A DNA stretch of 63,881 nucleotides, filler included, from Sluysia triapertura (Eukaryota): the NCBI GenBank assembly GCA_046118255.1. It is 5 parts of 5 records of this genome, joined end to end, with 100 filler letters (N's around TTAATTAATTAA, not from the genome) between each part and the next. Parts side by side here need not be neighbours in the genome. Positions count along the whole stretch, not along the records: positions 1 to 14,258 come from JBJNIA010001564.1; 4 more parts are not named here. One strand, written 5' to 3'. The notes below the pieces were generated by a model, which ran no database searches, had not been told where the DNA came from, and saw only the letters and a list, made by a program, of their open reading frames with translations. The position numbers were made by a program, and so were the translations under genes. Shown here in pieces: positions 1 through 39,857 of the stretch (positions within the stretch are counted from its first letter, which is position 1; each line of letters opens with the position of its first letter).

Positions 1-284
1 TTTAGCTGTTAATTAAAAATAACGTTAGCAGACACTGCTATCACAATCGCGAAATAGCAGCTGTTAAATAACAGCGATGTGTTGAAAAAATATTAATATT
101 TCACAGAAGTGAAATATTAACAGACATAATAATGCATTTTTGATATGAAGAATTAAAATTTAATTTTGTTAATTTTTCTTTATTTTTGCTAAAGAATTAA
201 AACTGTTGTTCATAATATTTAATTCATAAGAAACAGAAAAAATACATTAAAAAGGTGTTTATTTTATTTATGAAGTTTTTCTAT

Positions 285-351
285 AGTTGGGGCGCCAAAA
301 ATAAATTTGTTGAAATGGGATCGCAACTTAAAAAGTTTACTCACATCGCTG
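285..351. mobile_element. Probable right end of a hAT-type non-autonomous element
   Basis: GGGATCGCAACTTAAAAAGTTT...CGCTG resembles the common hAT terminus GGGTCGCGA..AAAAAGGTTG..CACTG. The other end was not seen. Confidence 0.35.
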
Positions 352-604
352 TGGAGTACGTATTGAATTTGAATTATGAATTTTTATTTTTTAAACAGTC
401 TTTATTAATCATTGCATAAAGAAATGCTTATCGTTTATATTTCAAATGAATATACAACAAGCTAAGAGAGAATGTCAAATCACAGGAATGTTGTGAAATA
501 TATAATAATATAGTTCTTTCTATTTCAGAAATATACATTCTAAGTTATTATAGTAGATATTGGCGCTGTACGATTTAATTTATTAATATTAATATTAATA
601 TTAA

Positions 605-605
<1 letters not shown>

Positions 606-650
<45 letters not shown>

Positions 651-662
651 GTTATTGTTATT
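606..662. repeat. (ATT)n microsatellite
   Basis: Direct reading of a tattattat run. Confidence 0.95.
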
Positions 663-789
663 AAAACGAAAATTAAATTATTTTTTCAAGTTTCAATAAA
701 ACAAATACAATAAAATTCGAGATTGATTGTAAAACGTGGTAATAAAAATTGACAAGTAAACAACGATTGTTTAAAATTCGCGGCCTTCA

Positions 790-1500
790 TATTGTTGGGA
801 TTGCCCGACTGTGGAACAAGAAGTAAATAAGAGACATGGAAATTACAAAGTATAAGATAGAACATTATAAATATTGTTGGAGATATTGATGAAGATGAAA
901 TATATATATAATAATGTTAACAGCTGAAGAATACCTTTGAGTTCGAAAGACCTATATAAGACTTTGTGGAAGCTTGAGATGGTTTAGAAAACATTTAGAA
1001 GTATTAAGGTATTTTTGAACTTCTTAACCTTGAAATCATTTAAAACTTTATTAAACTTTAGGTAATCTTGAAACCCAGATAAGCATTTAAGAACTTTGAG
1101 TAACCATATGATGTAGTTGAAATCTTTAAAATATTTGAGAAATAAAATCATTGTTGATTATATTAAAGATAAATGTGATATGTTGATAATAAATATAAAG
1201 AAGTACGCGATAAATTTATATGTACACATAGTGGTGAAGATGAAAACATCTAGAACATCCTAAATGCCTTATCAAATACTAAATAATTGTAGAACTTTAA
1301 TAAAACATTTAAATGTAAAATAAGATAAAGTCTGAAAATAAATTAATTATAAAATTTATAATGATGCAAATATAATGAGTTGAATATGAGATGATTGCTA
1401 AGAAATAGGAAAATCTAGAAGTGAGTTTGAAATGTTTGAGAATAAGAACCTTAAACATTTTTCATTAGAAAATTGGGTATGAAAAACTAAAAATCAATTA
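790..1500 (+). repeat. Dispersed repeat family R1, copy 1 (unclassified, TE-derived)
   Basis: Colinear with 9048-9870: tgttgggatt, gaagaa(t/c)acct..gagttc.aaagac, gaacttcttaaccttg, ttaaagataaat, gtgaa(g)gtgaaaacat, tgattgctaagaaa, tagaaaattg. Confidence 0.8.
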
Positions 1501-1524
1501 TTTATATATGATTTTATCATTTAG

Positions 1525-1869
1525 TTATACAATTGGTGTATGATTAATAATTTCGAGGATATCGCTACTGTCAATATTGCTCGACCTAAATTCATTGAAC
1601 ATCTCAAAAACGACAATTTCGGCAATGCTATATACTGGTGCCAGAAAATCCCGAGTTCTTCAGGTGAACAAGCAGCTTTATTAAATCGAATAGCAAGTAA
1701 ACTGATGTCGATTTTGTTGTTCAATAAACAAGACCACACAGGAAAATCTGGTGAATGGACTGAAAGATCTGTGGAACATTTATTGGATTCTTTTGGAGAA
1801 GAATGTGACCTTCCAGGGAAGAAAATGTTATTTCTTCAAAAGTTGTGCCAGATTAATAAAATTATTCAG
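1525..1869 (+). CDS. NUP85: Internal exon of a Nup85-like nucleoporin
   Basis: Acceptor tcatttag|TTA at 1524/1525 and donor CAG|gttatt at 1869/1870 bound a 345-nt open frame. LKNDNFGNAIYWCQK...HLLDSFGEECDLPGKKMLFLQKLCQINK resembles the Nup85 segment NNRLGSALSWSIR...[27 protein letters not shown] (recalled, not searched). Confidence 0.6.
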
Positions 1870-2213
1870 GTTATTGTGATTATTACTGTGAATTCTGTAT
1901 AGATTATTATTATTATGTCTCAATGAAATATTCATCTTTGTTTCCAAATTTTTTATTATTTCTAAAAGATATTCAGTACTTCCGTAACGTAAGCATTTGT
2001 AAATTATTGTCATGAAATTGAGTTAGTTATCAATTAATGAACAATAAGTTTAGCTGTTTCTTTATTAGTAAATTTTCGAATATTTTATTTAATTGATATT
2101 TACACATTTTAACAATACAATTAATATTTTCTTCCGTGTTCATTTTTCAATCCATAAAACAGCTAAATCTTTAAAGTTTAAGATTGTGATTAAAGACGAT
2201 GTTGAGTTTTAGA

Positions 2214-2276
<63 letters not shown>
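2214..2276. repeat. (AAT)n microsatellite
   Basis: Direct reading. Confidence 0.95.
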
Positions 2277-2277
<1 letters not shown>

Positions 2278-5200
2278 TAATTTAAATTTATTTAATAATT
2301 TATTAATTGTCATAATGTTAAATTTATTCTTTCTTCACGTATGTTCACTTTAAAACATGCCAAAAAATAAAAATAGAAGATAATTTAGGCATTTTGGTTT
2401 CTAACCCTTTAACCGCCGGTGAGCGCATTTTTGTGAACATAAATTTATTTGAGAGATCCATAAGTCACTAACAGTCATATCAACCCATTTAGTCATTCTT
2501 TCACGTTAATAATTGTTGATGTTGTTTATAATAGCAGTCATAAAGTCGTTATCAGAAAAATATTCTAAGTAGGTTAGTTGGTCCCATGATTGATTACCAA
2601 TATTTGGTTTTGCCTGGCATGTATAATTATGAAAATTTGGTTGAAAGTGCGTATTTTGCCACGTCCATGTATCATTCTGTAAATATTTAAATTATGCAAA
2701 ATATGTAAAAAAATTGTATTAAAATATATCAAAAATGTATTAAATTATGTAAAATTGTAAATAATTAATTTATTGATACTTTAAAAATATTTTATAATGT
2801 TGTAATTAAAGAAATTGTAAATTAATTAATTTTAGACTTTACAATATAAAATACGAAATTTTGAATTTCAAACTTTAAATATTTATATTATATCACGTCA
2901 ATTATTTTTAAATTATTTTTTGAACTTTAGAATTGAACCTTAAATATTTAAATATTTACATTATTGTGAATGAATATTCGAAAATCATTTGAAAATAAAA
3001 TGTTTATATTATTAAATTTAAATATCGGAAATAGATAGCAAACGGAATTATAATAACATAAATAAAACATATCGTCTCTACAAATCACCATAACAAAAGC
3101 TAAAGACAACGCGACTCACTTTTTGAAAAATTAATATAGCAAACATGAAGAGGGCGATGTTGAAGATATCATCGAAAGAGAAATTTCTGAAGAAACACCT
3201 TCATATCCTGAATCAACATTGATGAATCAAATACTGACAATGAAGACCTATTTATTAGTAACCGGAGGAAGAGAATGAGGATAATTTCTAAATCAGAAGA
3301 TGAATGGAAAAATGAAGTAGATAAAGTTACACAAAACTTTCAATGACATGATAAACAATCTTACAATTACAATAAGTTTCGCTAGGAATTATATTAAATT
3401 AATATTTATAAACAGATTAAAAAATTCTATTATTGGAACTTCATTAAAAATAATGTCATTTTATTTTTGAAATTAATGCGTGGTGAGCTACATTGATCGA
3501 AAACCAAAAATAACATTAAAAAGTTTATCAAAATTGTAATTTCACAGTATTAAAAGTGTCCCACTTTAAATCATTCAATATCAAAACTGGGATATTTCGA
3601 GAATATTTGGTCAGTTATACGAAAAGTTAGCACACTCGAATTCTGATGGTAAGAATAATTAAGTACCTTTTTAATTTGTTTTGAACGACCAGTCGGGATT
3701 TATTAACACTTACCAATATCATATAAGACTTCGTAAGAAAAGGAACGCATGCTTTTCAGCTTTCAACGAAAATGAAGCATTATTTGCTGCGGAAACATAG
3801 AAACCATAATACGAATAAAAGCATTTGTTTGACTATCATTACCATATCTAGAGTAAACTGTTTCCAGATTCAATAAACATATGAAATGTATTTCTTTGAC
3901 CCAAAAGGCCTTCATCTTTTATTGAATCACAGAATTTATTTGAATCGAAAATTTTTCTAGATTACCTAAACCAAAATTAGTATCTGATCTTAATTGCCTA
4001 ATTACATCAACATGTTACTGTTCCCATACAATTCATTAGTGGAACCATTATGAGTGGTACAACTTCTTAACATTGTTATTTAACCTACGTTTTTACCAAG
4101 ATGAAAGATTATTTGAATTGTATTTAGATGAATTATTCTGATCAGACAATTTTGCATTTCTATCATCATGCAGAAATGAATCAATACCACAAAACGAAAT
4201 AGATAACATGTTTTCTTATCTCAAATTAATAACCAATCAAGAACATGACCAATTTATTACCAATTATAATATTACTCAAATTATTTTAAATCTAAATATT
4301 TGAAGCGTTTCTAACACGAATATCTATTTTATTTTTTCGGATCGATTAGACATAACACCATTAAGAACTTGTAATAAATGTAATGGTTCTAATGCATCGC
4401 AAATATCAAATTATGACTCTTATTAAACTATTGTCTATTTAATTCTTTTACACCAATTTTAATAAGTTCACTCATTTTGATTCATTAAATTACTTTAATT
4501 GGAATTGGATGTATAAATTTATAAATATTTTCTAATCATTTAATTTCTCCAATTATATGGAAACATGTGGTTGGTAAATGTAATTAGTCATATTTCATAA
4601 TACACTGAAGTATGATGTAATAATTGATGTACTATTACAGTACATTGTATCACTTGTTATTACTGTTATTATTGGTTATCGTATTAGAATTAGTCATTTA
4701 TAATACAATTGTTGCAAATGAAGATGCTAATGCTTGAAAACACAAATCGATAAAACTAATGTAGTTTATGATAATGGTGATGATTGTAATTTGATCGATA
4801 AATGATGTATAATAAGCATGTGAAATACATCTGCAATCAACAAAAATTTGTAAATGTTGCAGATATTTATGAAAAACAAATGATGGAATAATTTCGCAGA
4901 TTTTCCAGATTTATTTGATATATAATGTACTTTTTATAATTTTGTAATTGTAAGCTTATAATGTTCAATGTACGAAATATTTTTATTAAGTATAACAAGA
5001 GTGATTAATTTCGCTTTTTAATAATAATTTTTTGTACTTTCAATTATTTTTAAACGTTATTGTTACATACCACATAATTAAATTTCTGTCTCTGGAAGTG
5101 CTGAAACAATTATTTCTTTCGTATTTGGCATGATGTTACATGAATTGGAATTAAACTCAGTACATTTTCTTGAACATGAACAATGTCGTTTATGTAGTTT

Positions 5201-6683
5201 GAAAAACTTATAAGAATATCACAGTTATGATTCGCGATAAAAACGTTAATGTTCTTGGATCTGAACGTATCCTTGATACAAATTACTATATTCATTGATA
5301 GCCTTTTGATGAAGAATTAACAGCACAAAATAGTTATACACCAGTATACAGTTAAAAGTATAAGGTACAAGACATATTAATGCTGCCTCTAACAAACCAT
5401 ATGCAAGTGTTCTATTATGAAAAAGCTTACCTTGCATCTACAAAATTATCTGAAGGTTAGTTCGCCTAATAGATACGACTTAAATCTACGAAGAAGGCGA
5501 CCTATTAGGATTTTAAAATTAGTCACATTATGTTTTAAGTATAAGAGTAGCAGCTTATGAAACTTTTAAAGCAAATATATTCAATAAAAATTATATTTTA
5601 AATTAGCCCTTTTACGGTTTAGCGAGAAGCAATGATTTTTCCATGAAAGAGAATTAATTTTATACAGGCCGATTATACAAAAATCAAATATAATAATGAT
5701 AAAATTTTGATAATATTCTGTTAGATCTGATATTAACGCATTTTAGTATGAATGTTGAGCTATCCTTATTACGGTCTGTCACTAAAAGTAAAAATAACAT
5801 TAAGTGAGGTTTTAGGTCCTACTTTTTACAATAAGGACTTTAAACTTATAAAAATAAACTTACATTCATGGATTGATTAAAAAATGAAACTGTCCAAATT
5901 TTTCTCGCCTTGATTTTTTCATGTTTTTCTTCGTTAAATTTCCCTATTTATATAAAATTTAAGCAGCCATTTTGCATATTTATTTTATTTAATAAAACAA
6001 AAATGTTAATATTTATATTTAAAACAAAGAAATTTTTTAACTTTAAATATTTTATATTAAATTTTAAATATAAACATTTTATTTTATTTGATTTTTAACT
6101 TTACGTATTTTTTTATATTATTATACTAAAAATAAATAATAAAAATTGTCTTTATGAAAATAATATTAAATAATTTTTAAAATTCAACAAATGTCTAAAT
6201 GTTTTATGTAAATGTTTTATGTTTTATAACTCAACAATATAATAATACCATAAAGCTATAAAGACAAATATATGACGAAGATTATGAGAAATACAAATTA
6301 CAAATAAAAATCTAAAAATAAAACAAGAAACAATTACCTGAAGTTATTTATAAATATCCAAAAGCAATTGCAAAAACAAATATTATACAGTTAATTCTGT
6401 TATAATTAAAAACAAAATACCTTTAACAAAAATAATAAAGTAATAAACTATGCAGGATTCCAATCTGTAATCAAAAGAAAATGCAAGACCTTGTTCATAG
6501 GAACAATGCAGGAGCAATAAAACCGAGCTTCTCTCCATTAGCTTCTAATCATTAATTTCATTTGTTAAAAAGAAAGATATGACAATGAGGTTTTTGTCGA
6601 CTTCAGGTTTTTATAATATAAGAACCAAGGTCAAGTTAAGTAAAAATGATAAAATTAAAATGAACCAACTAAGGTGTAACTTA

Positions 6684-7379
6684 TGATAATGATAACTTAA
6701 GTTTTTATATTTAATATTAATAATTTTGAAATATAAATTTGGCGATAAAAGCTACATATTTAGTGTTAGCAATTACACAAAATATTTGGATGAATTCAAT
6801 TATAAAGTTTTTGAATTCCCCATGACTATATTTAATATATCTAAATTTGAATTATTAAATAACTTACAGACAAATGTTTTTAAATGTATTAATATTCACG
6901 AATGTGATATCCATGATAATGACGATATTTAAAAAAATCAATTTATTAATATATTACATTTAAATAAGTGTAATAATGAAACAATTAATAATTTATTATT
7001 ATAGAGCAATAATAATTTCTTATTGTAGACATGAAAGACGTTTTAAGAATAAGGTAAAAGTAGTGTACAAAGCGTTTAAGAGGATTTAGGTTAGATGTAG
7101 CATTTAATAATCATATAAAGTTATGTAGTGAAAATCTTGATAATAAATGTGTATTTACTGATCACCAACATTTACGCAGATTTTGAATATGTATTACTAC
7201 CAGACAAACAATATCAACAAAACACGAAACATAACTGTAGGTTTATTATAAGTAGCTCCAAAAAAAACAGAATACTATAGTTTTGCTGGTGATAAATGTG
7301 TAGGAATTTTTGTAAATATGATTTAAGAACTTTTTCAAAATATAACGAAGATCAAACAGAAATGAATTTAACTAGTTAC
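6684..7379 (+). pseudogene. Degenerate N-terminal/exonuclease region of a Polinton/Maverick-type protein-primed PolB
   Basis: Ordered motifs DNDNLSF...SVSNYTKYLDEFNYKVFEFPMTIFNISKFELLNNLQTNVF...INNLLL...IYADFEYVLLP..YQQNTKH...YYSFAGDKCV match the recalled pattern NDNKCF..RVSKY..LNF.GIEFP..I.KFE.QN..INVF..INLLL..IYADFE..Y.GEDCV. Stops and frameshifts are present; an LTR at 7380 truncates it. Confidence 0.65.
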
Positions 7380-8488
7380 TGCGAAGATTTTAGAATAAAA
7401 CGCTTAGCTTAGTGTGAGTTCACCAACGTACTGGGCTTACCGGTTAGGGCCGGCCGTTGGATTTTCTATCAAAAATTTAAAGTAAATGGAGCTGTTAATA
7501 ATTTAGGGAGAGATTTCCAATATTTAATTTCTTATTAGTACAACAATATAAGTCACTTTAATTATATTTTAATGAGGTTCTTCCTTCGAACCTGTTAATA
7601 GTTTAATTTTGTTCTTAAATCGAACCTTTAATTGATTTTATTAAGGTTCCTAAAGTGAACCTTTAACAGTTACAAAGAGATTTTGATTAGGTTCTAAACC
7701 GAACCTTTTACAAAAGAAATTTTAGTAAGGTTCGTACTAGAACTTGTAATGTTGTCAAAAATTTAATAATTAATACAAAAAAATGTTTTATTAAAAAATA
7801 GAATAATATACATATAAAAAAGAGATGTACTACAATTTTAATAAGATTATATATCGAAATGATTTTAATGAGCTACTTTGAAATAGTAGTGGAATAGTAT
7901 CAAAATTTTAAGTCTATTTTAAATACATAGTTTTAAAAACTGTAAAATACTTAAAAATAAAAAACAAACGATAAAGACTAATGAATCGAATCCACGTGTA
8001 ATCAAAATTGCTTCGTAAGAGTTCCCTTTTCTCAGATTATATAAGATTTATAAGATTTGTAAACAATTCTTTATGGTCAAATATGGTTGAAATTTTAGTG
8101 TTTATATATAAAAACGAATGACCTTGAGGTCATTGAAACAAAAATAAAATTATAAAATTACAATTAAAATAAATATGCTCCTTTGCGTTAAAAAGAAATT
8201 TTTTATTAAAAATTATAATTATTTTAAAAATTTGATATTTTAAAAATTAAAATTTATAAAAAAAATAAAATCTTACTTAAAATGTCTTTTAATCCAAATA
8301 AATTAATTTATTAAATAATTTGTAAACTTAAGCAATAAAAATGAATATATTTTAGTTAAACATAATCAATAGCTATATGTTGAACTTTAATTTTTGTGTA
8401 CAATTTTTAACTATGAATTTAAATACAATTAATTAATACACAAATTTATGAACTCCGTTTTAACTAAGTGAACTTTAACAATATACAA
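7380..8488 (+). mobile_element. Solo-LTR-like element (family L1); right end approximate
   Basis: Starts TGCGAAGATTTTAGAATAAA (cf. TGTGAAGATTCTTAGAATAAA at 27132 and TGTGAGAAA..TAGAATAAA at 36374) followed by the CCAACG...CGTTGG hairpin. Confidence 0.65.
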
Positions 8489-8492
8489 TTAA

Positions 8493-8903
8493 CCCTTTGT
8501 AGTCCTGGGTCGAAGCAGCCCTGACGCTTATGTAATCTGTTATGTCAAAGATGGTCCGATAAGAAAATGTTAACATTTCGTATTTTTATTTGCATCGACT
8601 CGTCATTATCGTCAAGTTCAGACCACTATACTACCATTGCACTATCTGCGAAGTATACAGATTAATTTTATCGGAGTTGTGCAAGTGTAATATCGTAAAC
8701 AAATAGGAATATTCGTGTTATTTTATTGGTAAGTTAGAATTTAGAATTTCATTTTTATACTATATAAATATTACATAAACGTAATTAAATTAATAAATAA
8801 ATATTTTTTAAATTCGATTTGAGTATGTTTTTTCGAGTCAGGCGTTTAATTGTGGAAATTTTGTGTAGAGGATTCAATGGAAATAAAGTAGGACTGCAAA
8901 AGG
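8493..8903. mobile_element. piggyBac-type MITE
   Basis: TTAA|CCCTTTGTAGTCCT ... AGGACTGCAAAAGG|TTAA: imperfect 14-bp TIRs flanked by TTAA on both sides, 411 bp, non-coding. Confidence 0.8.
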
Positions 8904-9047
8904 TTAATAAAGAAACGATAAAAAAGATTCTTTTGTGATGGGAATTTATGTAATAACGAAATTTTATTTTTTCATTTTCATCAATATATTACGGAAATGA
9001 AATGCATTATCATTAATTATAATTATAATAATATCGATTTAATTATA

Positions 9048-9870
9048 TTGTTGGGATTGTCCAGTTAGTGTAAAATACATACTAAAAATATACTATAATA
9101 TATATAAGAAAAAGTGATATAAAATATCTGAAATATGATAATATAAGCATAATTAAATTTTTCTAGAGCAAGACTAATGAACAAGAAAATGTTTATAATC
9201 ATTGTGAAACTGAAGAACACCTTGGAGTTCCAAAGACTTTTGTAGGGTATTCAGACCCTTATGAAAGCCTAAGAAGGGTTTAAAAAGAATCCTTTGAACT
9301 TCTTAACCTTGGTATCATTTGAGACCTTGTTGATCTTTTGAAACCTTTAAAGACTTTCGAGTAATCTTGTAAAATGTTTGGAACCTTTAAAATCATGGTT
9401 AATAATATTAAAGATAAATTTGATACATTAATAATTAACATAAAAAAGTACAAAAAGGAATCAGAATAGTGAAGGTGAAAACATATAGAGCCTCCTCAAT
9501 ACCTTATAAAGTATTTAACAACTTTATATACATAATAAAACCTTTTAAACTTAGAACAAAATAAGTTAAAATAAATAAATAATTAATTAAAATCTTAATT
9601 AGCTTAAGTTAAATTACGTTTGTGTGAATAACTTTTGAATGACTAATACTATGTTAAAACTGTAATTGTATATGTATGTGTTTGAAAGAGATATTCCGAG
9701 GAAGCTAATGTTTGATGAAAAGGTAATTAATTGAATATGAAATGATTGCTAAGAAAAAGGAGAATCTAAAAATGAGGTTGAAATAGTTTGCTTGGGAATG
9801 AGACCCTAAGCATTTTGCACTAGAAAATTGAATATGAAGAAATGAAAATTAATTGAATTCCAAAAACTAA
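9048..9870 (+). repeat. Dispersed repeat family R1, copy 2
   Basis: Colinear similarity with 790-1500. Confidence 0.8.
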
Positions 9871-11841
9871 AGTTAAATTCATCATTTTTAAGTATGTCAA
9901 TAATAATGAAAATGGTTATTTTAATGTAGAAGTAATTTATGAAAAAATAGATCGAGTAGAGTAGAAGAAAAAAGAGAGTTGATTGATAATCGAATTTACA
10001 GGTTGTACCATGTAAATGTCAAAGTCATTGTGGTCGATTTAATCTTTAAAAGAGGTTTCGATGATTTGTGTAAGAATAATTTCTGATTGTGAATTTGGGA
10101 ATTATTGGATGACACAAAAGTATAAAATAGAATAATTAAACCTTGCACAAACATTTATTAACGTTAGATGATCCATGCTGTCATTTTATCATAATTTCTG
10201 TCATTTTATTTTAATTTTTACTTAAGTTAATCGTTATTTAATCACTTAAGATTAAGTTATATGACAAAATGCTTAAATTATTTGACAAGAGGATTAAATT
10301 ATATGAAAAACCGCGTAATTAATTAAAATCTTAATAAACGCATTCGTTGAATGCAGAATTTTATGATAATGTTTCTTTCAGTTAGTCCTTGATAGGGAGC
10401 AAAGTCAAATTTTAATTAATTCTCAAAAATAAATTTTTAACTTTTACCTATTTCGAATGTTGTAGTGAGAATGAATTGAATATGAGATGATTGATATGAA
10501 TGAGAATAATTTGAAAATGTTTTCTATTAGAATATGAGAAGTAAAATAATGGTTGATCTTTAATAATGTTTTCTGAGTCTTGTACCATATAATTGTCGGT
10601 CTCTTCTGCATTATATGTTCGAATGATTAGTGTATAAACAATTTTATAAAACTCAAACGTGATTGGATAATGAGAAAGTATAAAAATGAGTAGTTGTAAA
10701 ATTTTATAGGATAAGAAATTCCATATTGATTATTTAATCATTTTATTATAGGATCCCACTTTTGGAAATGTTGTAATGTTTTACAAAAATTTTCTCATCT
10801 TTTCTATAGGAAGAAATAGTGCCTATATTACTTGAATATTTCCATGTATTATTATTATTATTACTATTACTATTATTATTGCGTCTGTTTCAATTTTTAT
10901 TGTGATTGAATAAAAATTATGTCTTATTCTGGTTTGTTAATTACATTTGGTTAGATATAAAATATGTTCTGGTTTATTCTAAAAACCTACCTAACATAAA
11001 TTTTATTCTAAAATCTAAAGAGTTCGCCAACAATACAAGACTTATCTAGTTAAGGGTTTGCCTAAAATTATAAAGGTTAATAAGGTCGTAAATATTATAA
11101 TTACTTAATCTATTCACTTACTACAGTTAATATTAATAATTTTATTAGCTATTTTAGATCCTTATTTAAAATAGGACTATAACAATATATTTTAAAGGCT
11201 TGTTTAAAATAAGCTTGTCAAAAATAAACTTTAATTATATTGAAACTATACAAGTTAACAATTACTGATAATAAATTAAACTTTTTAATAATTTATTACG
11301 ATATTACTAAAATAAGAATGATTATAGTCAATAGTCAATTTATTATATTAAGGTTATATAAACATTAAAAGTTTTAGGAGTATAAAAAACTTATGCGAAT
11401 GAAGCTAACGTGATCCCAAATTATAGTAATCCTCTTTCCAATCCTTCGATAATGAATTCTGTCGTAATTGAATTTATCTTCTGTTATTTTTTAAATTAAA
11501 GTTTTATATTAAATGAACTTACTTATTAAACACTTAGATAATTTCCTGTTTCCGTTAACTATTCAAATTCTTTAAATAATAATCTATTTCCGTTTTAAAT
11601 ATTTATAATCACATATTCAAATTATATACACTAAACAGTATCTGTTTTATAAATGTGTTAGTTATAATAATAAAATTTTAATTATAATATAATGTTAAAT
11701 ACTTTTCTTATTTTACTTATTAATTTCTCATTATTTTACTTATAACTCTTATATCTTAATCATACAATTAATCATAAAATTTAAAACAATATTATTTTCA
11801 ATATTATTGGTCAATATTTTAACCAATAAAATCAATTTCAG

Positions 11842-12248
11842 GTTAAATTTCCAATCGCATATTCATTGATTGTATATCGTGATCCAGATCAAGTTTACAG
11901 ACTTTTCAAAGCCATTTATCGTCCATTCAATCTTTATTGTTTCCATGTCGACTCGAAAAGTTCCTCTTCTCTGCATCGATTTGTACAAGAATTACATTCT
12001 CTTTATGACAATGTAATTGTACCTTCTAAATTCATTGATGTGGTGCACTCTAAATTCAGTGTACTGGAAGCAGAGTTATTGTGTATGCGTGCACTTTTAA
12101 ATTATTCAGAACAATTTTCATGGAAACCAGCAGCCCAATGGAAATATTTCATCAATTTAACTGGCCAAGAGTGGCCATTGAAAGTAAACCTAGAAATAGT
12201 CAGAATTCTGAAAAGTCTTCGTGGAGCTAATTTGGTGGAGAAGTTGAA
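11842..12248 (+). CDS. GCNT: Exon of a core-2/I-branching beta-1,6-N-acetylglucosaminyltransferase (GT14/Branch family)
   Basis: FPIAYSLIVYRD..RLFKAIYRPFNLYCFHVDSKS and WKYFINLTGQEWPLKVNLEIVRILK are Branch-domain hallmarks. Acceptor tttcag|GTT at 11841/11842; donor AA|gtaaat at 12248/12249. Confidence 0.92.
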
Positions 12249-12414
12249 GTAAATAATTTTATACAAATTGAATTTATTGCGATTTTAAATATGAAATTAA
12301 ATTTTTAATACTATCTCCTTTCAAACATGATTGTCACGTTAGTTTTCTATACAATATATATATATATGTAAGTATAGTTGAAAATAATGTTTTATATTAT
12401 AGATTAATGACAAA

Positions 12415-28302: not shown

Positions 28303-28399
28303 CAAGTTTGGTATAAAACGTATATACTAGGCGAACTGACCTTTCAGATAATTTGTTAAGTATAAGGAAATACTAGCAAATTGTATTGAATAAAAACCA

Positions 28400-37483: not shown

Positions 37484-39857
37484 ATATTAAATTACGTATA
37501 AAGCGAGTATTTGTCATACATAATTTTGAAGATCTAATTCTATTTGAATAATTTTTCTAATACTGAAGATTTGATTTTGAATATCAATCCTGAAATAATA
37601 AAGCAAAATAAAATATTAAAGATATTCCGTAACAATTTAGTAAAGAAATGTTATGTTTTTTAAGCAACTTAGTAAAAATATAAAACCAATATATAAATAC
37701 AAAGGATTATAACTTATAATGTAAATAAATAAATCTGGTTAATGCTTGAAGCTTTAATTTTAATTATATATATATATAAAATAACGTCCGTAAATTACAT
37801 CTTAGCGAATTTGGCATACTATATTTTTGTTCTTTAAATTAGTTGAGATAACGAAATAATAAGCAGTTTATTAATGATATTTGATATTTTGTTGAAATAT
37901 TAAAAAAGATTATGTGATAAGGTATTTGTTGAATTAGCACTAAAGAATAAATCATTTTAATAAAGTAACATAGTAAAAATATTGAATTTACATGCTCGAA
38001 CAAAGAGTTTCAAGTCACAATAGTATAAGTAATTAAGGATCTTATTAAGTGTATAATAGTTTAATATTTATTATTATTTAATAGATAACGCTAGAATCTA
38101 TTTAAGTCGAATCTTTTCGTAGAGCCAATACTAATATTTAGCAAAAATCCTGTGACCTCATCTTCCATTAGGATTTAAATCGTTGATCACAGGTGAACCC
38201 AAAAACTTAAGTTATATTTACTATAAGATTTACATATAAAAACACAAGTAGTTCGTATTGAAAGAATAAGGAGATTGTTCGGCACAAATTGCAGGAGATT
38301 AGTTGGCTTATGACGGACTAAAAAGAAATGAATAATTATATGAAGTAATTATTTTCTCTTTCCAACTTTTAATCTCCTAAGCAATTACCCAACTACTATA
38401 CTTTTGTAATAAAATCAGAACAAGGTAGCTGAATGAGATATAGAGCCTCATTTCCATTAGTAGAGCTGCGTCACCACATTTGTAATAAACAGTGTGACTG
38501 AGAACTTACTTTTAGAATTGACTAAACTTTATGTGCAATATTTCTAATTTTACGGTTAGTGATATGCGTTTTTATTATTGTTAAATATGGGTTTCAACAT
38601 TTGTCGCGTTGTCATCTCTGGAATAATTGAATAAGTGTTAATAATTAATAATTTTGAATTTAAATATTTTTTTAAAAGAATAATTGATAATTTTGTTATT
38701 TCTGCGATTTAAATAACAAAATATATCGAAATTACATATTAATTTAATTATTATTTTGAATAAAAACACAAATAAAATCATTGTTTAAACGTTTCAGATA
38801 TTTGAACTCTATCACAATTCTCACAAAATAATTGCGTTTTATAAAGTGATATAATATTAAACATATTGAGACTCTTACGACATCCAACTTCTAAACTAAT
38901 TTAACTATGTTTTGTCAAGGCATGAAAACATAGACACAACACCGTAATTGTCTTATGTACATCGATGTTGGTACATGTTTAGTGGTCAGAGAAAGTAAAT
39001 CGTCACAATAGTTTAATCTGAAGGTTTATAATCATGAGTACATACCGAGAAATATTTCCATCGAATTGACTTCTTTGATGCAAAAAGTGATCACTTCAAT
39101 TACTATAATTTTATTCACAAAAGTTCTGGGTTTTGAAAATTACTTTATTCGTTGCCAAGGTGATAATAATGCATTCTAACACTATATTATCGTAGCAATA
39201 ATAATAGAAAGAGAACATCATTAAAATACAATGATTAGGTCCCAAAATTTATAATTTAGTGATTCATAAGATACCGTAAAATGTATTAATGTTTTGCCGA
39301 TGAGTAAAAGATTTGTAAATATGGTATAGTGTTATGTAGTAATTGGTGCTGAATATTTTTGATGTGTATTTATGCGATAATAAAATCGTCGGTAATGATT
39401 TGGGTCACTAAAGCAAAATTCTTCAAAGTTTCCTAACTTAATATTGCAGTGGTACTGTAAGACAACATCTCAGATAAATAGTCTACATTCAGTTGGTACA
39501 TTTTTGTACTGGGGAAGAGAAAATCTATTTTTTATAAGGTTCCGACTATGGATGTATTGGCATTATGGAAAAGTTACCAATTATTTCCCAAATCATTTTA
39601 GTGAAGGTGATCCATATGTACGCGATTGCAAATTTAGATTCAGTTGTGCGTGAATTTGCACGAGACAGAATTTTATCATTACATGAAATAAAATGTAAAT
39701 GGTATCCATGCTAATAATGCTGACATATTAGAAGTTTTAACTACATTTGAGATTAATTAAATTAAGCAATCTAACATTAAGTACATATTATTAATTTTAG
39801 CCCAAACTAATCTTGATTTTTAAAAATTATTTTTACTGATATATCATGTATGAATGA

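What the first reader, a model, noticed from the sequence alone, without database searches (positions are those of the whole stretch)
5459..5513. Covarying RGTTYRCC-stem-loop-GGATTT motif shared by dissimilar LTR families, about 35-55 nt inside one LTR end
Seen: the same frame recurs at 5459(+), 7417(+), 15954(+), 22923(+), 30978(+), 36420(+), 38145-38200(-), 45168(+), 48528(-) and 49752(-), with half copies at 28328(-) and 52504(-). The flanks are conserved while the stem changes on both arms: CCTAATAG/CTATTAGG, CCTATAAT/GTTATAGG, CCTGTGATC/GGTCACAGG, CCTATAG/CCATAGG, CCAACG/CGTTGG. CC-to-GG spans are 38-45 nt, and the 44-45 nt class keeps an inner (A)CGAYTTA.ATC..G(A/G)AGA core. Where an end can be mapped, a TG/CA terminus lies about 35-55 nt away. 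Inference: compensatory change across families points to a selected cis-acting RNA or ssDNA structure (U5/R element for priming, packaging or 3' processing, or an unrecognised catalytic RNA). I cannot match it to hammerhead, twister or HDV consensus.
Basis: partly seen in the sequence, partly recalled or inferred. Interest (0 to 1): 0.8.

Follow-up and report, generated by a model that had tools for sequence, protein, structure and literature searches.

The report
Conserved U5 hairpin of LTR retrotransposons
The motif is a real, structurally conserved hairpin at the U5 end of the long terminal repeats of a very abundant retrotransposon group, about 50-70 bases upstream of the tRNA primer-binding site; this is the kind of cis-element retroviruses use to start reverse transcription, so it is interesting but not a new kind of thing.

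Summary
GTTYRCC-N28-48-GGATTT occurs 10,966 times in this 619-Mb, 25%-GC genome against 528 for the reversed-pattern control. Both window copies (5459-5513, 7417-7464) lie 38-57 nt inside the TG end of two repeats whose bodies share no homology: 5402-6236 and 7380-8480, both TG...CA.

The stem covaries. Genome-wide, the third stem pair is A..T 5,424 times, T..A 3,783 times and mismatched only 265 times.

In gag-bearing copies the order is AAATCC-hairpin-GGYGAAC, then 46-69 nt, then the LTR end ...CA, then a 4-10 nt spacer, then a primer-binding site TGGTGCCCAG.... This arrangement occurs 172 times against 0 for the control. A leader and a gag gene with a CCHC knuckle follow.

A second stem lies directly against the PBS. 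It pairs U5 with the LTR end and spacer.

So the motif is a U5 (or R-U5) stem-loop, most likely acting in tRNA-primed initiation of reverse transcription. Its single-stranded YGAAC flank can pair with a tRNA T-loop (GTTCR). Nothing supports a ribozyme. Both window copies are solo LTRs. Function, RNA ends and the acting strand are untested because no RNA data exist.

The parts
5459..5513 (-). U5 hairpin motif, copy 1 (CCT...AGG class). On the retroelement sense (minus) strand it reads AAATCC-stem-loop-stem-GGCGAAC.
   Evidence: Searches show the exact motif. The covariance model R1 scores 59.1 bits on the minus strand at 5454-5519. The sense-strand fold is a 12-bp helix with one G.U pair and one bulge.
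7417..7464 (-). U5 hairpin motif, copy 2 (CCA...TGG class, the most abundant). Its sense reading is AAATCC-AACGG..CGTTGG-TGAAC.
   Evidence: Searches show the motif. R1 scores 69.0 bits on the minus strand at 7412-7470. This class has 5,424 genome places against 8 for the control.
5402..6236 (-). Solo LTR of family 1 (835 bp). On the plus strand it reads TGCAAGTG...ATAACTCAACA. The U5 end is at 5402.
   Evidence: Both ends are defined by alignment to 11 other genome copies. No primer-binding site, leader or gag lies beside it in the window.
7380..8480 (-). Solo LTR of family 2 (1,101 bp). On the plus strand it reads TGCGAAG...AACTTTAACA. The U5 end is at 7380.
   Evidence: Ends are defined by alignment to L044-L054. 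It has no colinear homology to the family-1 LTR.
7392..7399 (-). The 5' arm of the second (U5-IR-like) stem in family 2. Sense UUUAUUCU, which is AGAATAAA on the plus strand. Its partner AGAAUAAA lies between the LTR end and the PBS in complete elements and is absent beside this solo LTR.
   Evidence: One search shows AGAATAAA conserved across family-2 subfamilies. One search lists dozens of 5' LTR junctions reading ...TTTATTCT...CACA-(TA)GAATAAAC-TGGTGCCCAG.
5438..5446 (-). The 5' arm of the second (U5-IR-like) stem in family 1. Sense AUUUUGUAG. In complete elements it pairs with the LTR terminus CUUGCA plus the spacer AAAA(U).
   Evidence: By analogy with L055, L057 and L059-L061, where MFE folds give this stem in 6 of 7 copies. 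For the window copy itself this is inferred.

Best explanation
What it is: the motif is a stem-loop in the U5 (or R-U5) part of the long terminal repeats of one large LTR-retrotransposon lineage.

Shown. On the element's sense strand it reads AAAUCC, then a covarying helix of 6-12 bp, then a variable inner helix and loop carrying an invariant unpaired UAA(R) on the 3' side, then the closing strand, then GGYGAAC. It ends 35-65 nt before the LTR's terminal CA and 46-69 nt before a primer-binding site. Between it and that site lies a second stem, which pairs U5 with the LTR terminus and the short spacer.

Inferred. It is an RNA structure of the genomic transcript that helps assemble the initiation complex for tRNA-primed minus-strand DNA synthesis. 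The helix holds the conserved single-stranded YGAAC(Y) in place, where it can pair with the G53-T54-Psi55-C56-R57 part of the primer tRNA's T-loop. This is how the primer activation signal of HIV-1 and the U5-TpsiC contact of Rous sarcoma virus work. The adjacent U5-IR-like stem would bring the hairpin and the PBS together.

In the window: the thousands of genomic copies, including both window copies, are mostly solo LTRs that merely carry the element.
For: LTR nature and orientation. The elements have TG...CA termini at fixed distances from the motif. In L055, L057, L059, L060 and L061 the order on one strand is motif, LTR end CTTGCA, AAAYT, an 18-nt TGGTGCC... site ending the complement of ...CCA, about 550 nt of leader, then gag. 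Gag has a weak PF03732 hit at E=0.0018, below Pfam's cut-off, and a CX2CX4HX4C knuckle that I read by hand from the nucleotide sequence printed.

Genome-wide link to the PBS. GGYRAAC-N30-85-TGGTGCCCAG occurs 172 times against 0 for the control, in both major LTR groups.

Selection on structure. Searches give 9,207 complementary against 265 mismatched third pairs. One search gives a covariation score of 0.419 against 0.147, with 0 of 500 shuffles reaching it. In some searches I read many distinct complementary helix variants: over 15 for the outer helix and at least 5 for the inner helix within family 2.

Second stem next to the PBS..

T-loop complementarity. In L068 and L069 the PBS continues as a 36-nt complement of a tRNA-like 3' end containing GGTTCAAT. 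UGAAC(U), the flank in most PBS-linked copies, is its 6-nt complement.

Precedent. PAS/TpsiC-arm pairing is reported for all retroviral genomes (PMC11181671). U5-IR stem-loop: PMC3601003, citing Miller et al. 1997.
Against: There are no RNA data, so the transcription start, the poly(A) site, and therefore whether the hairpin lies in R or U5, are unknown.

The strand test is indecisive. Predicted stability is equal on both strands (p=0.64). G.U against A.C counts are 40 against 26 in favour of the sense strand, on an alignment fitted to the model.

The YGAAC-T-loop pairing is only 5-6 bp and would fit almost any tRNA. The GGCGAAC variant mismatches A57 of the inferred primer.

The primer tRNA gene was not found.

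No reverse transcriptase or integrase was seen in the copies I could reach. Target-site duplications are inconclusive: a 4-bp match in L041 and none in three family-2 copies.

Much of the covariation count comes from a few large lineages, so the number of independent events is far smaller than the number of copies.
Confidence: 0.62

Rival explanations
1. It is an R-region hairpin serving 3'-end formation and/or first-strand transfer, like the HIV-1 poly(A) and TAR hairpins. The unpaired NNUAAR would act as a poly(A)-signal-like hexamer presented by the helix. Cleavage would occur at the conserved GAAC(Y)CA just 3' of the stem, with the U-rich UUUAUUCU as the downstream element. Transcription would begin at the 5' base of the hairpin.
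For: The invariant UAA(R) lies 15-22 nt upstream of the conserved GGYGAAC flank, and a U-rich block follows in family 2. In family 1 a TATA-like CTTATAC lies 30 nt upstream of AAATCC, and TTTAAAG-like strings recur at -27 to -35 in several families (read by eye). Flatworm LTR elements are known to use non-canonical A/T-rich poly(A) signals (PMC4558846). Because the helix forms equally well on both strands, a role in both the RNA and its cDNA copy would fit.
Against: The hexamer is not AAUAAA or AUUAAA; in the largest family it is GGUAAG. TATA-like strings are common by chance at 75% A+T, and family 2a has none at -30. The U-rich block is better explained as one arm of the stem next to the PBS. 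No transcript ends are available.
Confidence: 0.2
2. It is a packaging or dimerisation signal recognised by the element's Gag (CCHC nucleocapsid-like knuckle). Conserved unpaired bases (UAAR and the flanks) would be displayed by a helix whose own sequence is free to vary.
For: Conserved unpaired nucleotides on a covarying scaffold are typical of protein-binding RNA sites. The linked gag has a zinc knuckle, read by hand from the sequence printed. Many LTR families with unrelated bodies keep the module, as expected if shared proteins act on them in trans.
Against: Packaging signals of retroviruses and LTR retrotransposons usually lie downstream of the PBS in the leader or gag, so that they are unique to full-length RNA. 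An LTR-borne signal would be present at both RNA ends if it lies in R. The apical loop shows no G-rich or palindromic motif typical of nucleocapsid or kissing-loop sites on the sense strand.
Confidence: 0.1
3. It acts as DNA rather than RNA. It could be a hairpin in minus-strand strong-stop DNA (which has the reader's strand polarity) that affects strand transfer or RNase H/RT pausing. Or it could be a double-stranded protein-binding site, for example a B-box-like RGTTCRCC bound by a host factor.
For: The helix is as stable on the antisense strand as on the sense strand. Some family-level wobble pairs read as G.T on the antisense strand (my reading). RGTTCRCC resembles the first half of a Pol III B box.
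Against: A double-stranded DNA site would not require compensatory changes in a helix. The B-box resemblance fails at the spacing of the terminal CC. Sense-strand G.U pairs are at least as common.
Confidence: 0.05
4. It is a self-cleaving ribozyme embedded in the LTR, as hammerheads are in Penelope-like elements and twisters in schistosome repeats.
For: Flatworm repeats are known to carry ribozymes (my background knowledge). The motif has conserved unpaired nucleotides on a covarying scaffold.
Against: No Rfam family matches on either strand at E up to 1, including the hammerhead, twister, HDV-like, pistol and hatchet models. No CUGANGA/GAAA or other catalytic core is present, and no pseudoknot partners are conserved. 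Cleavage here would sever U5 and the PBS from the rest of the genomic RNA's 5' end, which is hard to reconcile with tRNA-primed replication.
Confidence: 0.02

Closest known systems
U5-IR stem-loop and U5-TpsiC interaction of Rous sarcoma virus / avian retroviruses
   Same: Structured elements lie in U5 just upstream of the PBS. A short single-stranded U5 segment is complementary to the primer tRNA's T-loop. An inverted-repeat stem abuts the PBS: here UUUAUUCU/AGAAUAAA, or UUUUGYAAG/CUUGCAAAA.
   Different: There is no sequence homology. The host is an invertebrate retrotransposon. Function is untested. Details of the RSV system are from my own knowledge plus the citation in PMC3601003.
Primer activation signal (PAS) of HIV-1 and other retroviruses
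   Same: It is a conserved U5 sequence upstream of the PBS that can pair with the TpsiC arm of the primer tRNA. It sits at the base of a helix that could mask or expose it (PMC11181671, PMC1865047).
   Different: The PAS is 8 nt and pairs with tRNA positions 48-55. Here only 5-6 nt (YGAACY) are complementary to positions 52-57, and two of the conserved bases (GG) belong to the helix.
HIV-1 TAR and poly(A) hairpins (R region)
   Same: They are LTR-borne hairpins of 45-60 nt with a small conserved bulge. They are conserved in structure more than in sequence and form in both the RNA and the complementary strong-stop DNA.
   Different: It is not known whether the present hairpin lies in R. It has no AAUAAA, and no Tat-like partner is known.
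Flatworm LTR elements ta-TRIM / lennie (Echinococcus) (PMC4558846)
   Same: They have TG...CA LTRs, a PBS about 4 nt after the 5' LTR that begins TGGTG.., a large excess of solo LTRs, and gag without recognisable relatives outside flatworms.
   Different: They are different LTR sequences, and no U5 hairpin motif was described there. That PBS (TGGTGGCAG, tRNA-Leu) differs from TGGTGCCCAG here.
Tf1-type self-priming U5-IR structures
   Same: They are U5 hairpins required for initiation of reverse transcription in an LTR retrotransposon.
   Different: Tf1 primes with its own 5' end. Here the PBS is complementary to an RNA ending ...GGGCACCA, and in two copies the match extends 36 nt into a T-arm-like sequence, so priming is tRNA-type.

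Membership tests
LTR retrotransposon long terminal repeat | Terminal 5'-TG...CA-3' dinucleotides at precise, reproducible ends | tested here: met
   Family 1 reads TGCAAGTG...CTCAACA in 9 of 10 aligned copies. Family 2 reads TGCGAAG...TTTAACA. Other families begin TG(C/T)RRG.
LTR retrotransposon long terminal repeat | A primer-binding site complementary to a tRNA 3' end (...CCA), a few nt after the 5' LTR | tested here: met
   TGGTGCCCAG... lies 4-10 nt after the LTR end. There are 172 genome places against 0 for the control, and six loci were read in full. The tRNA gene itself was not found.
LTR retrotransposon long terminal repeat | Internal gag and pol (RT, RNase H, integrase) genes | tested here: inconclusive
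   A gag-like ORF is present. It has a weak PF03732 hit at E=0.0018, below the curated cut-off, and a CCHC knuckle that I read by hand from the sequence printed. No pol domain was found within the roughly 3 kb downstream that I could fetch. The copies may be non-autonomous, or pol may lie further on.
LTR retrotransposon long terminal repeat | Two direct LTR copies, a polypurine tract before the 3' LTR, and a 4-6 bp target-site duplication | tested here: inconclusive
   No contig I could read holds both LTRs. There is one purine-rich flank (L033) and one 4-bp duplication (L041, AGAT). Three family-2 copies have none.
Retroviral-type U5 initiation elements (U5-IR / PAS) | Location in U5 within about 100 nt upstream of the PBS | tested here: met
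   The gap between the motif's 3' flank and the PBS is 46-69 nt.
Retroviral-type U5 initiation elements (U5-IR / PAS) | Complementarity of a conserved U5 segment to the TpsiC arm of the primer tRNA | tested here: inconclusive
   UGAAC(U) complements GGTTCA of the T-loop-like sequence seen in the extended PBS of L068 and L069. This is only 5-6 nt, it is generic to tRNAs, and the primer is unidentified.
Retroviral-type U5 initiation elements (U5-IR / PAS) | Requirement for efficient tRNA-primed initiation of reverse transcription | not testable with these tools
   This needs biochemical assays.
Structured RNA under selection | Compensatory base changes that maintain a helix | tested here: met
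   and the genome-wide 2x2 counts.
Self-cleaving ribozymes (hammerhead, twister, HDV-like, pistol, hatchet) | A match to the family's covariance model or catalytic core | tested here: not met
   cmscan of the whole window, both strands, at E up to 1 gave 0 matches.
tRNA or tRNA-derived SINE head | A cloverleaf, or A and B boxes at tRNA spacing | tested here: not met
   ARAGORN found none in the window. T-runs directly follow the motif on both strands. The elements are 0.8-1.1 kb with LTR ends.

The most novel reading that the evidence does not exclude
The hairpin with its invariant AAAUCC / UAAR / GGYGAAC unpaired bases could be a previously undescribed, lineage-wide docking module. It would be read by a specific partner: the primer tRNA's T-loop together with the element's RT or Gag. 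In that case many otherwise unrelated non-autonomous LTR families would retain it in order to be mobilised in trans. That would make it the LTR-retrotransposon counterpart of the shared 3' tails of LINE/SINE pairs. In the two copies (L068, L069) where the PBS itself extends through the T-loop complement, the U5 flank is degraded (GGTCTAAC in L068; no flank identified in L069). This hints that the two solutions may be interchangeable.
Probability: 0.15. Interest if true: 0.55.

Novelty: new variant of a known kind. Interest (0 to 1): 0.35.

Why it matters
If the reading is right, this genome offers thousands of natural variants of one U5 element, with many independent helix swaps. That is an unusually rich comparative data set for how LTR retrotransposons outside vertebrates and yeast build their reverse-transcription initiation complex, and for which cis-signals non-autonomous LTR families must keep to be mobilised. 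In practice, the motif and its fixed distance to the LTR end give a sharp marker for orienting and delimiting LTRs in a badly fragmented, AT-rich assembly. It does not point to a new class of RNA or a new mechanism.

Tried and rejected
- Rfam on the window, both strands, E up to 1: nothing. tRNA scan of the window: nothing.
- SINE head or Pol III gene: rejected. T-runs follow the motif at once, and the elements are 0.8-1.1 kb with TG...CA ends.
- Spliced-leader-like reading (GTGAGT donor plus an Sm-like AUUUU): rejected. The 'exons' differ completely between families, and the GU is specific to family 2.
- LINE 3' stem-loop: considered because a LINE ORF2 C-terminus lies upstream in L004. That LINE ends about 800 nt before the LTR and is unrelated. 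Most copies are full length at both ends, not 5'-truncated.
- Helitron or Helentron terminal hairpin and DNA-transposon TIRs: no terminal inverted repeats beyond TG/CA.
- Strand assignment from thermodynamics: no difference.
- A conserved long-range U5-leader structure by RNAalifold on 7 copies: nothing useful, partly because my cuts removed half of some hairpins.
- Primer tRNA gene. My first pattern was mis-registered by one base; it still surfaced L068, L069 and L072, which proved to be retroelement copies with an extended PBS, not tRNA genes. An exact 15-mer search found only decayed PBS copies.
- First PBS pattern, taken from a mutated copy: 0 hits.
- Expression: no RNA run exists for this organism.
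So both-LTR copies, PPT, TSD and pol could not be examined.
- Pfam on neighbouring ORFs gave only sub-threshold hits.
Full report
THE OBSERVATION

The window piece (1-14258) is contig C1564 of a 619-Mb assembly in 263,945 contigs. It is 24.7% G+C and has almost no long ORFs. One exon-like ORF (11866-12252) carries a Core-2/I-branching enzyme domain, so this is a eukaryotic, probably animal, genome.

- AGTTCGCC-TAATAG...CTATTA-GGATTT at 5459-5513
- AGTTCACC-AACG...CGTT-GGATTT at 7417-7464

The loose pattern GTTYRCC-N28-48-GGATTT has 10,966 places in the genome against 528 for the same pattern read backwards. Two sub-classes account for most of them:
- CCA...TGG: 5,424 against 8
- CCT...AGG: 3,783 against 19

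The mixed combinations are rare: CCA...AGG 145 and CCT...TGG 120. So 97% of copies keep the third stem pair complementary.

The printed samples show, by my reading, many different outer helices. Examples are TAATAG/CTATTA, TACG/CGTA, TGTGA/TCACA, TGCGA/TCGCA, TGAAG/CTTCA, TAACAG/CTGTTA and TAATTAG/CTAATTA. Within the CCAACG class there are several inner helices: CTGG/CCAG, CTAG/CTAG, CTTGG/CCAAG, TTGG/CCAA and TCTAG/CTAGA.

I built a covariance model from 38 copies and realigned 59 copies from all loci. On that alignment:
- 78% of cells pair, against 59% after shuffling.
- The covariation score is 0.419 against 0.147, with 0 of 500 shuffles as high.
- Sliding the 3' partner by 1-3 columns gives at most 0.146.

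Two caveats apply. The alignment is fitted to the model. The copies fall into a limited number of lineages, so independent events number in the tens, not the thousands.

WHAT THE MOTIF SITS IN

BLAST of the surrounding DNA against the genome shows that both window copies lie near the left end of interspersed repeats.

Aligning the copies fixes both ends:
- 5402-6236: TGCAAGTG...ATAACTCAACA
- 7380-8480: TGCGAAG...AACTTTAACA

In 37 of 40 copies in the fetched loci, similarity to other copies stops 35-67 nt upstream of the motif. The two window elements share nothing but low-complexity A+T matches.

The decisive evidence came from locus L035/L055. After four bases comes TGGTGCC...GTGAGGA, then about 550 nt of leader, then an ORF with a retrotransposon-gag look.

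Searching the genome with that internal region gave at least 40 copies. In L057, L059, L060 and L061 the same order recurs:
- motif read as AAATCC...GGYGAAC
- LTR end CTTGCA
- spacer AAAYT
- TGGTGC.CAGAGTGAGGA
- leader
- gag

Gag gives a weak Retrotrans_gag match (PF03732, E=0.0018, below Pfam's cut-off). It also has a CX2CX4HX4C zinc knuckle, which I read by hand from the nucleotide sequence printed.

Genome-wide, GGYRAAC-N30-85-TGGTGCCCAG occurs 172 times and its control 0 times. Most of these hits are family-2-type LTRs reading GGTGAACTCAC...TTTATTCT...TTTCTCACA-(TA)GAATAAAC-TGGTGCCCAG.

Three conclusions follow:
- Both LTR groups carry the same primer-binding site.
- The motif is at the U5 end of the LTR.

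About 2% of motif copies are followed by this site. The rest, including both window copies, have unrelated flanks and are solo or 3' LTRs.

Target-site duplications are inconclusive: one 4-bp match and three copies without.

ANATOMY ON THE SENSE STRAND

The layout is:

5'-AAAUCC / outer helix of 6-12 bp, often with one bulged base / inner helix of 2-5 bp / small apical stem and loop of variable sequence / invariant unpaired UAA(R) / inner helix 3' strand / outer helix 3' strand / GGYGAAC(Y)-3'

The CC and GG of the conserved flanks are the first two pairs of the helix. AAAU and YGAAC are single-stranded.

About 10-15 nt further on lies one arm of a second stem. Its other arm is the LTR terminus plus spacer, directly 5' of the PBS:
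- In the family-1 group, (A)UUUUGYAAG pairs with CUUGCA+AAAA(U). This stem is found by MFE folding in 6 of 7 copies.

Two different sequences forming the same stem at the same place is itself a compensatory change between lineages.

HOW IT MOST LIKELY WORKS

Shown:
- a selected helix
- conserved unpaired bases
- a fixed place in U5, 46-69 nt upstream of a tRNA-type PBS
- a second stem abutting the PBS

Inferred: the whole region is the cis-acting platform for initiation of minus-strand synthesis, as in retroviruses. There, U5 carries an inverted-repeat stem next to the PBS and a short sequence that pairs with the TpsiC arm of the primer. This is the PAS in HIV-1, said to be present in all retroviral genomes (PMC11181671; also PMC1865047), and the U5-IR/U5-TpsiC system in avian retroviruses (PMC3601003 citing Miller et al. 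1997; details from my own knowledge).

Here the candidate for that contact is YGAAC(Y). In L068 and L069 the PBS continues beyond 18 nt as a complement of ...CAGAGTGAARGGTTCAAT, a T-loop-like sequence. UGAACU, the flank of most PBS-linked copies, is the 6-nt complement of GGUUCA. In L068 the U5 flank is degraded (GGTCTAAC). In L069 I could not identify a flank at all. This is a hint, from one or two copies, that the two arrangements may substitute for each other.

Weak points:
- The pairing is short and generic to tRNAs.
- The GGCGAAC variant mismatches A57.
- I could not find the primer tRNA gene.

RIVALS

(a) An R-region hairpin for poly(A) site definition and strand transfer. NNUAAR lies 15-22 nt before the conserved flank, a U-rich block follows, and TATA-like strings lie about 30 nt upstream in some families. 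This cannot be excluded without transcript ends. I give it 0.2.

(b) A Gag-binding packaging signal: 0.1.

(c) A DNA-level role, for instance in minus-strand strong-stop DNA: 0.05. The helix is equally stable on both strands, and wobble counts favour the sense strand only mildly, 40 G.U against 26 A.C.

(d) A ribozyme: 0.02. There is no Rfam match and no catalytic core, and cleavage there would separate U5 and the PBS from the 5' part of the RNA.

COMPARISON AND NOVELTY

Structured U5 elements beside the PBS are textbook for retroviruses and are known for yeast LTR retrotransposons. Flatworm LTR elements with a TGGTG... PBS four bases after the LTR and a great excess of solo LTRs have also been described (PMC4558846).

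What is new here is the particular motif: its conserved flanks, the UAAR bulge, and its retention across LTR families that have otherwise diverged beyond recognition, in about 11,000 copies. I rate it a new variant of a known kind, of moderate interest.

LIMITS

No RNA runs exist for the organism. Only 86 loci could be fetched.

The sequences quoted are natural copies or IUPAC summaries of the short non-coding motif.

Noticed in passing
L068:750-1047 (minus strand) and L069:236-533: In these retroelement copies the primer-binding site continues well beyond 18 nt. About 36 nt complement a tRNA-like 3' end (...CAGAGTGAARGGTTCAATTCCTCACTCTGGGCACCA), including a whole T-loop. The extension can also fold on itself (CAGAGUGA / UCACUCUG). 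This is either read-through of the primer during plus-strand synthesis or a family with an extended PBS. ARAGORN and Rfam see no tRNA gene there. In L072 the same segment appears in the opposite orientation relative to the LTR.
   Followed up: partly
window 7392-7399 and 5438-5446; L055, L057, L059-L061; genome places: A second conserved stem pairs U5 with the LTR terminus and spacer directly 5' of the PBS. It is UUUAUUCU/AGAAUAAA in family 2 and UUUUGYAAG/CUUGCAAAA in the family-1 group. This is a U5-IR-like structure. In family 2 its 3' arm contains an AAUAAA hexamer lying outside the LTR.
   Followed up: partly
L086:1673-2928, L083, L062:3299-3568: Downstream of gag and an acidic region, these elements carry a roughly 300-aa ORF with no Pfam match. 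After it comes an ORF start with a sub-threshold match to a viral fusion glycoprotein family (PF24664 Monjiviricetes_fusion, E=6.6e-5). No protease, RT or integrase was seen between them. The copies may be env-bearing and/or non-autonomous. I only observed these; I did not follow them up.
   Followed up: no
L004:2387-3047 (minus strand) = G000:C14: An unrelated, very abundant LINE-like repeat (4,889 first-look candidates). Its ORF2 C-terminus has a CCHC-like motif, and its 3' end contains a tRNA T-arm-like sequence (GGTCCCGGGTTAGATCCCCGG). It ends about 800 nt before the neighbouring LTR.
   Followed up: partly
window 7548-7750: The family-2 LTR body contains five tandem units of about 40 nt, each holding a small hairpin AGGTTC-N7-GAACCT. 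They are conserved among copies L044-L053.
   Followed up: no
window 825-1472 and 9293-10140: Another interspersed repeat family occurs twice in the window in direct orientation, about 8.3 kb apart (67-85% identity). It is also present in L010 and L051. I did not characterise it.
   Followed up: no
window 572-700 and 2202-2308: Long (ATT)n and (AAT)n microsatellites in inverted orientation flank a 1.5-kb segment that holds the 120-aa ORF 1540-1902.
   Followed up: no
window 11866-12252: An exon-like ORF with a Core-2/I-branching enzyme domain (PF02485, E=2e-17). It is the only clear host-gene fragment in the piece and the basis for calling the genome animal-like.
   Followed up: partly
L005/L006 (G000:C14:7686-7854) and L018 (G000:C212:4427-4856): LTRs of different families are nested or abutting. 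One pair lies head to head, with one LTR cutting the other 20 nt from its motif. Another pair lies in the same orientation, 383 bp apart. This indicates repeated insertion into older copies.
   Followed up: no
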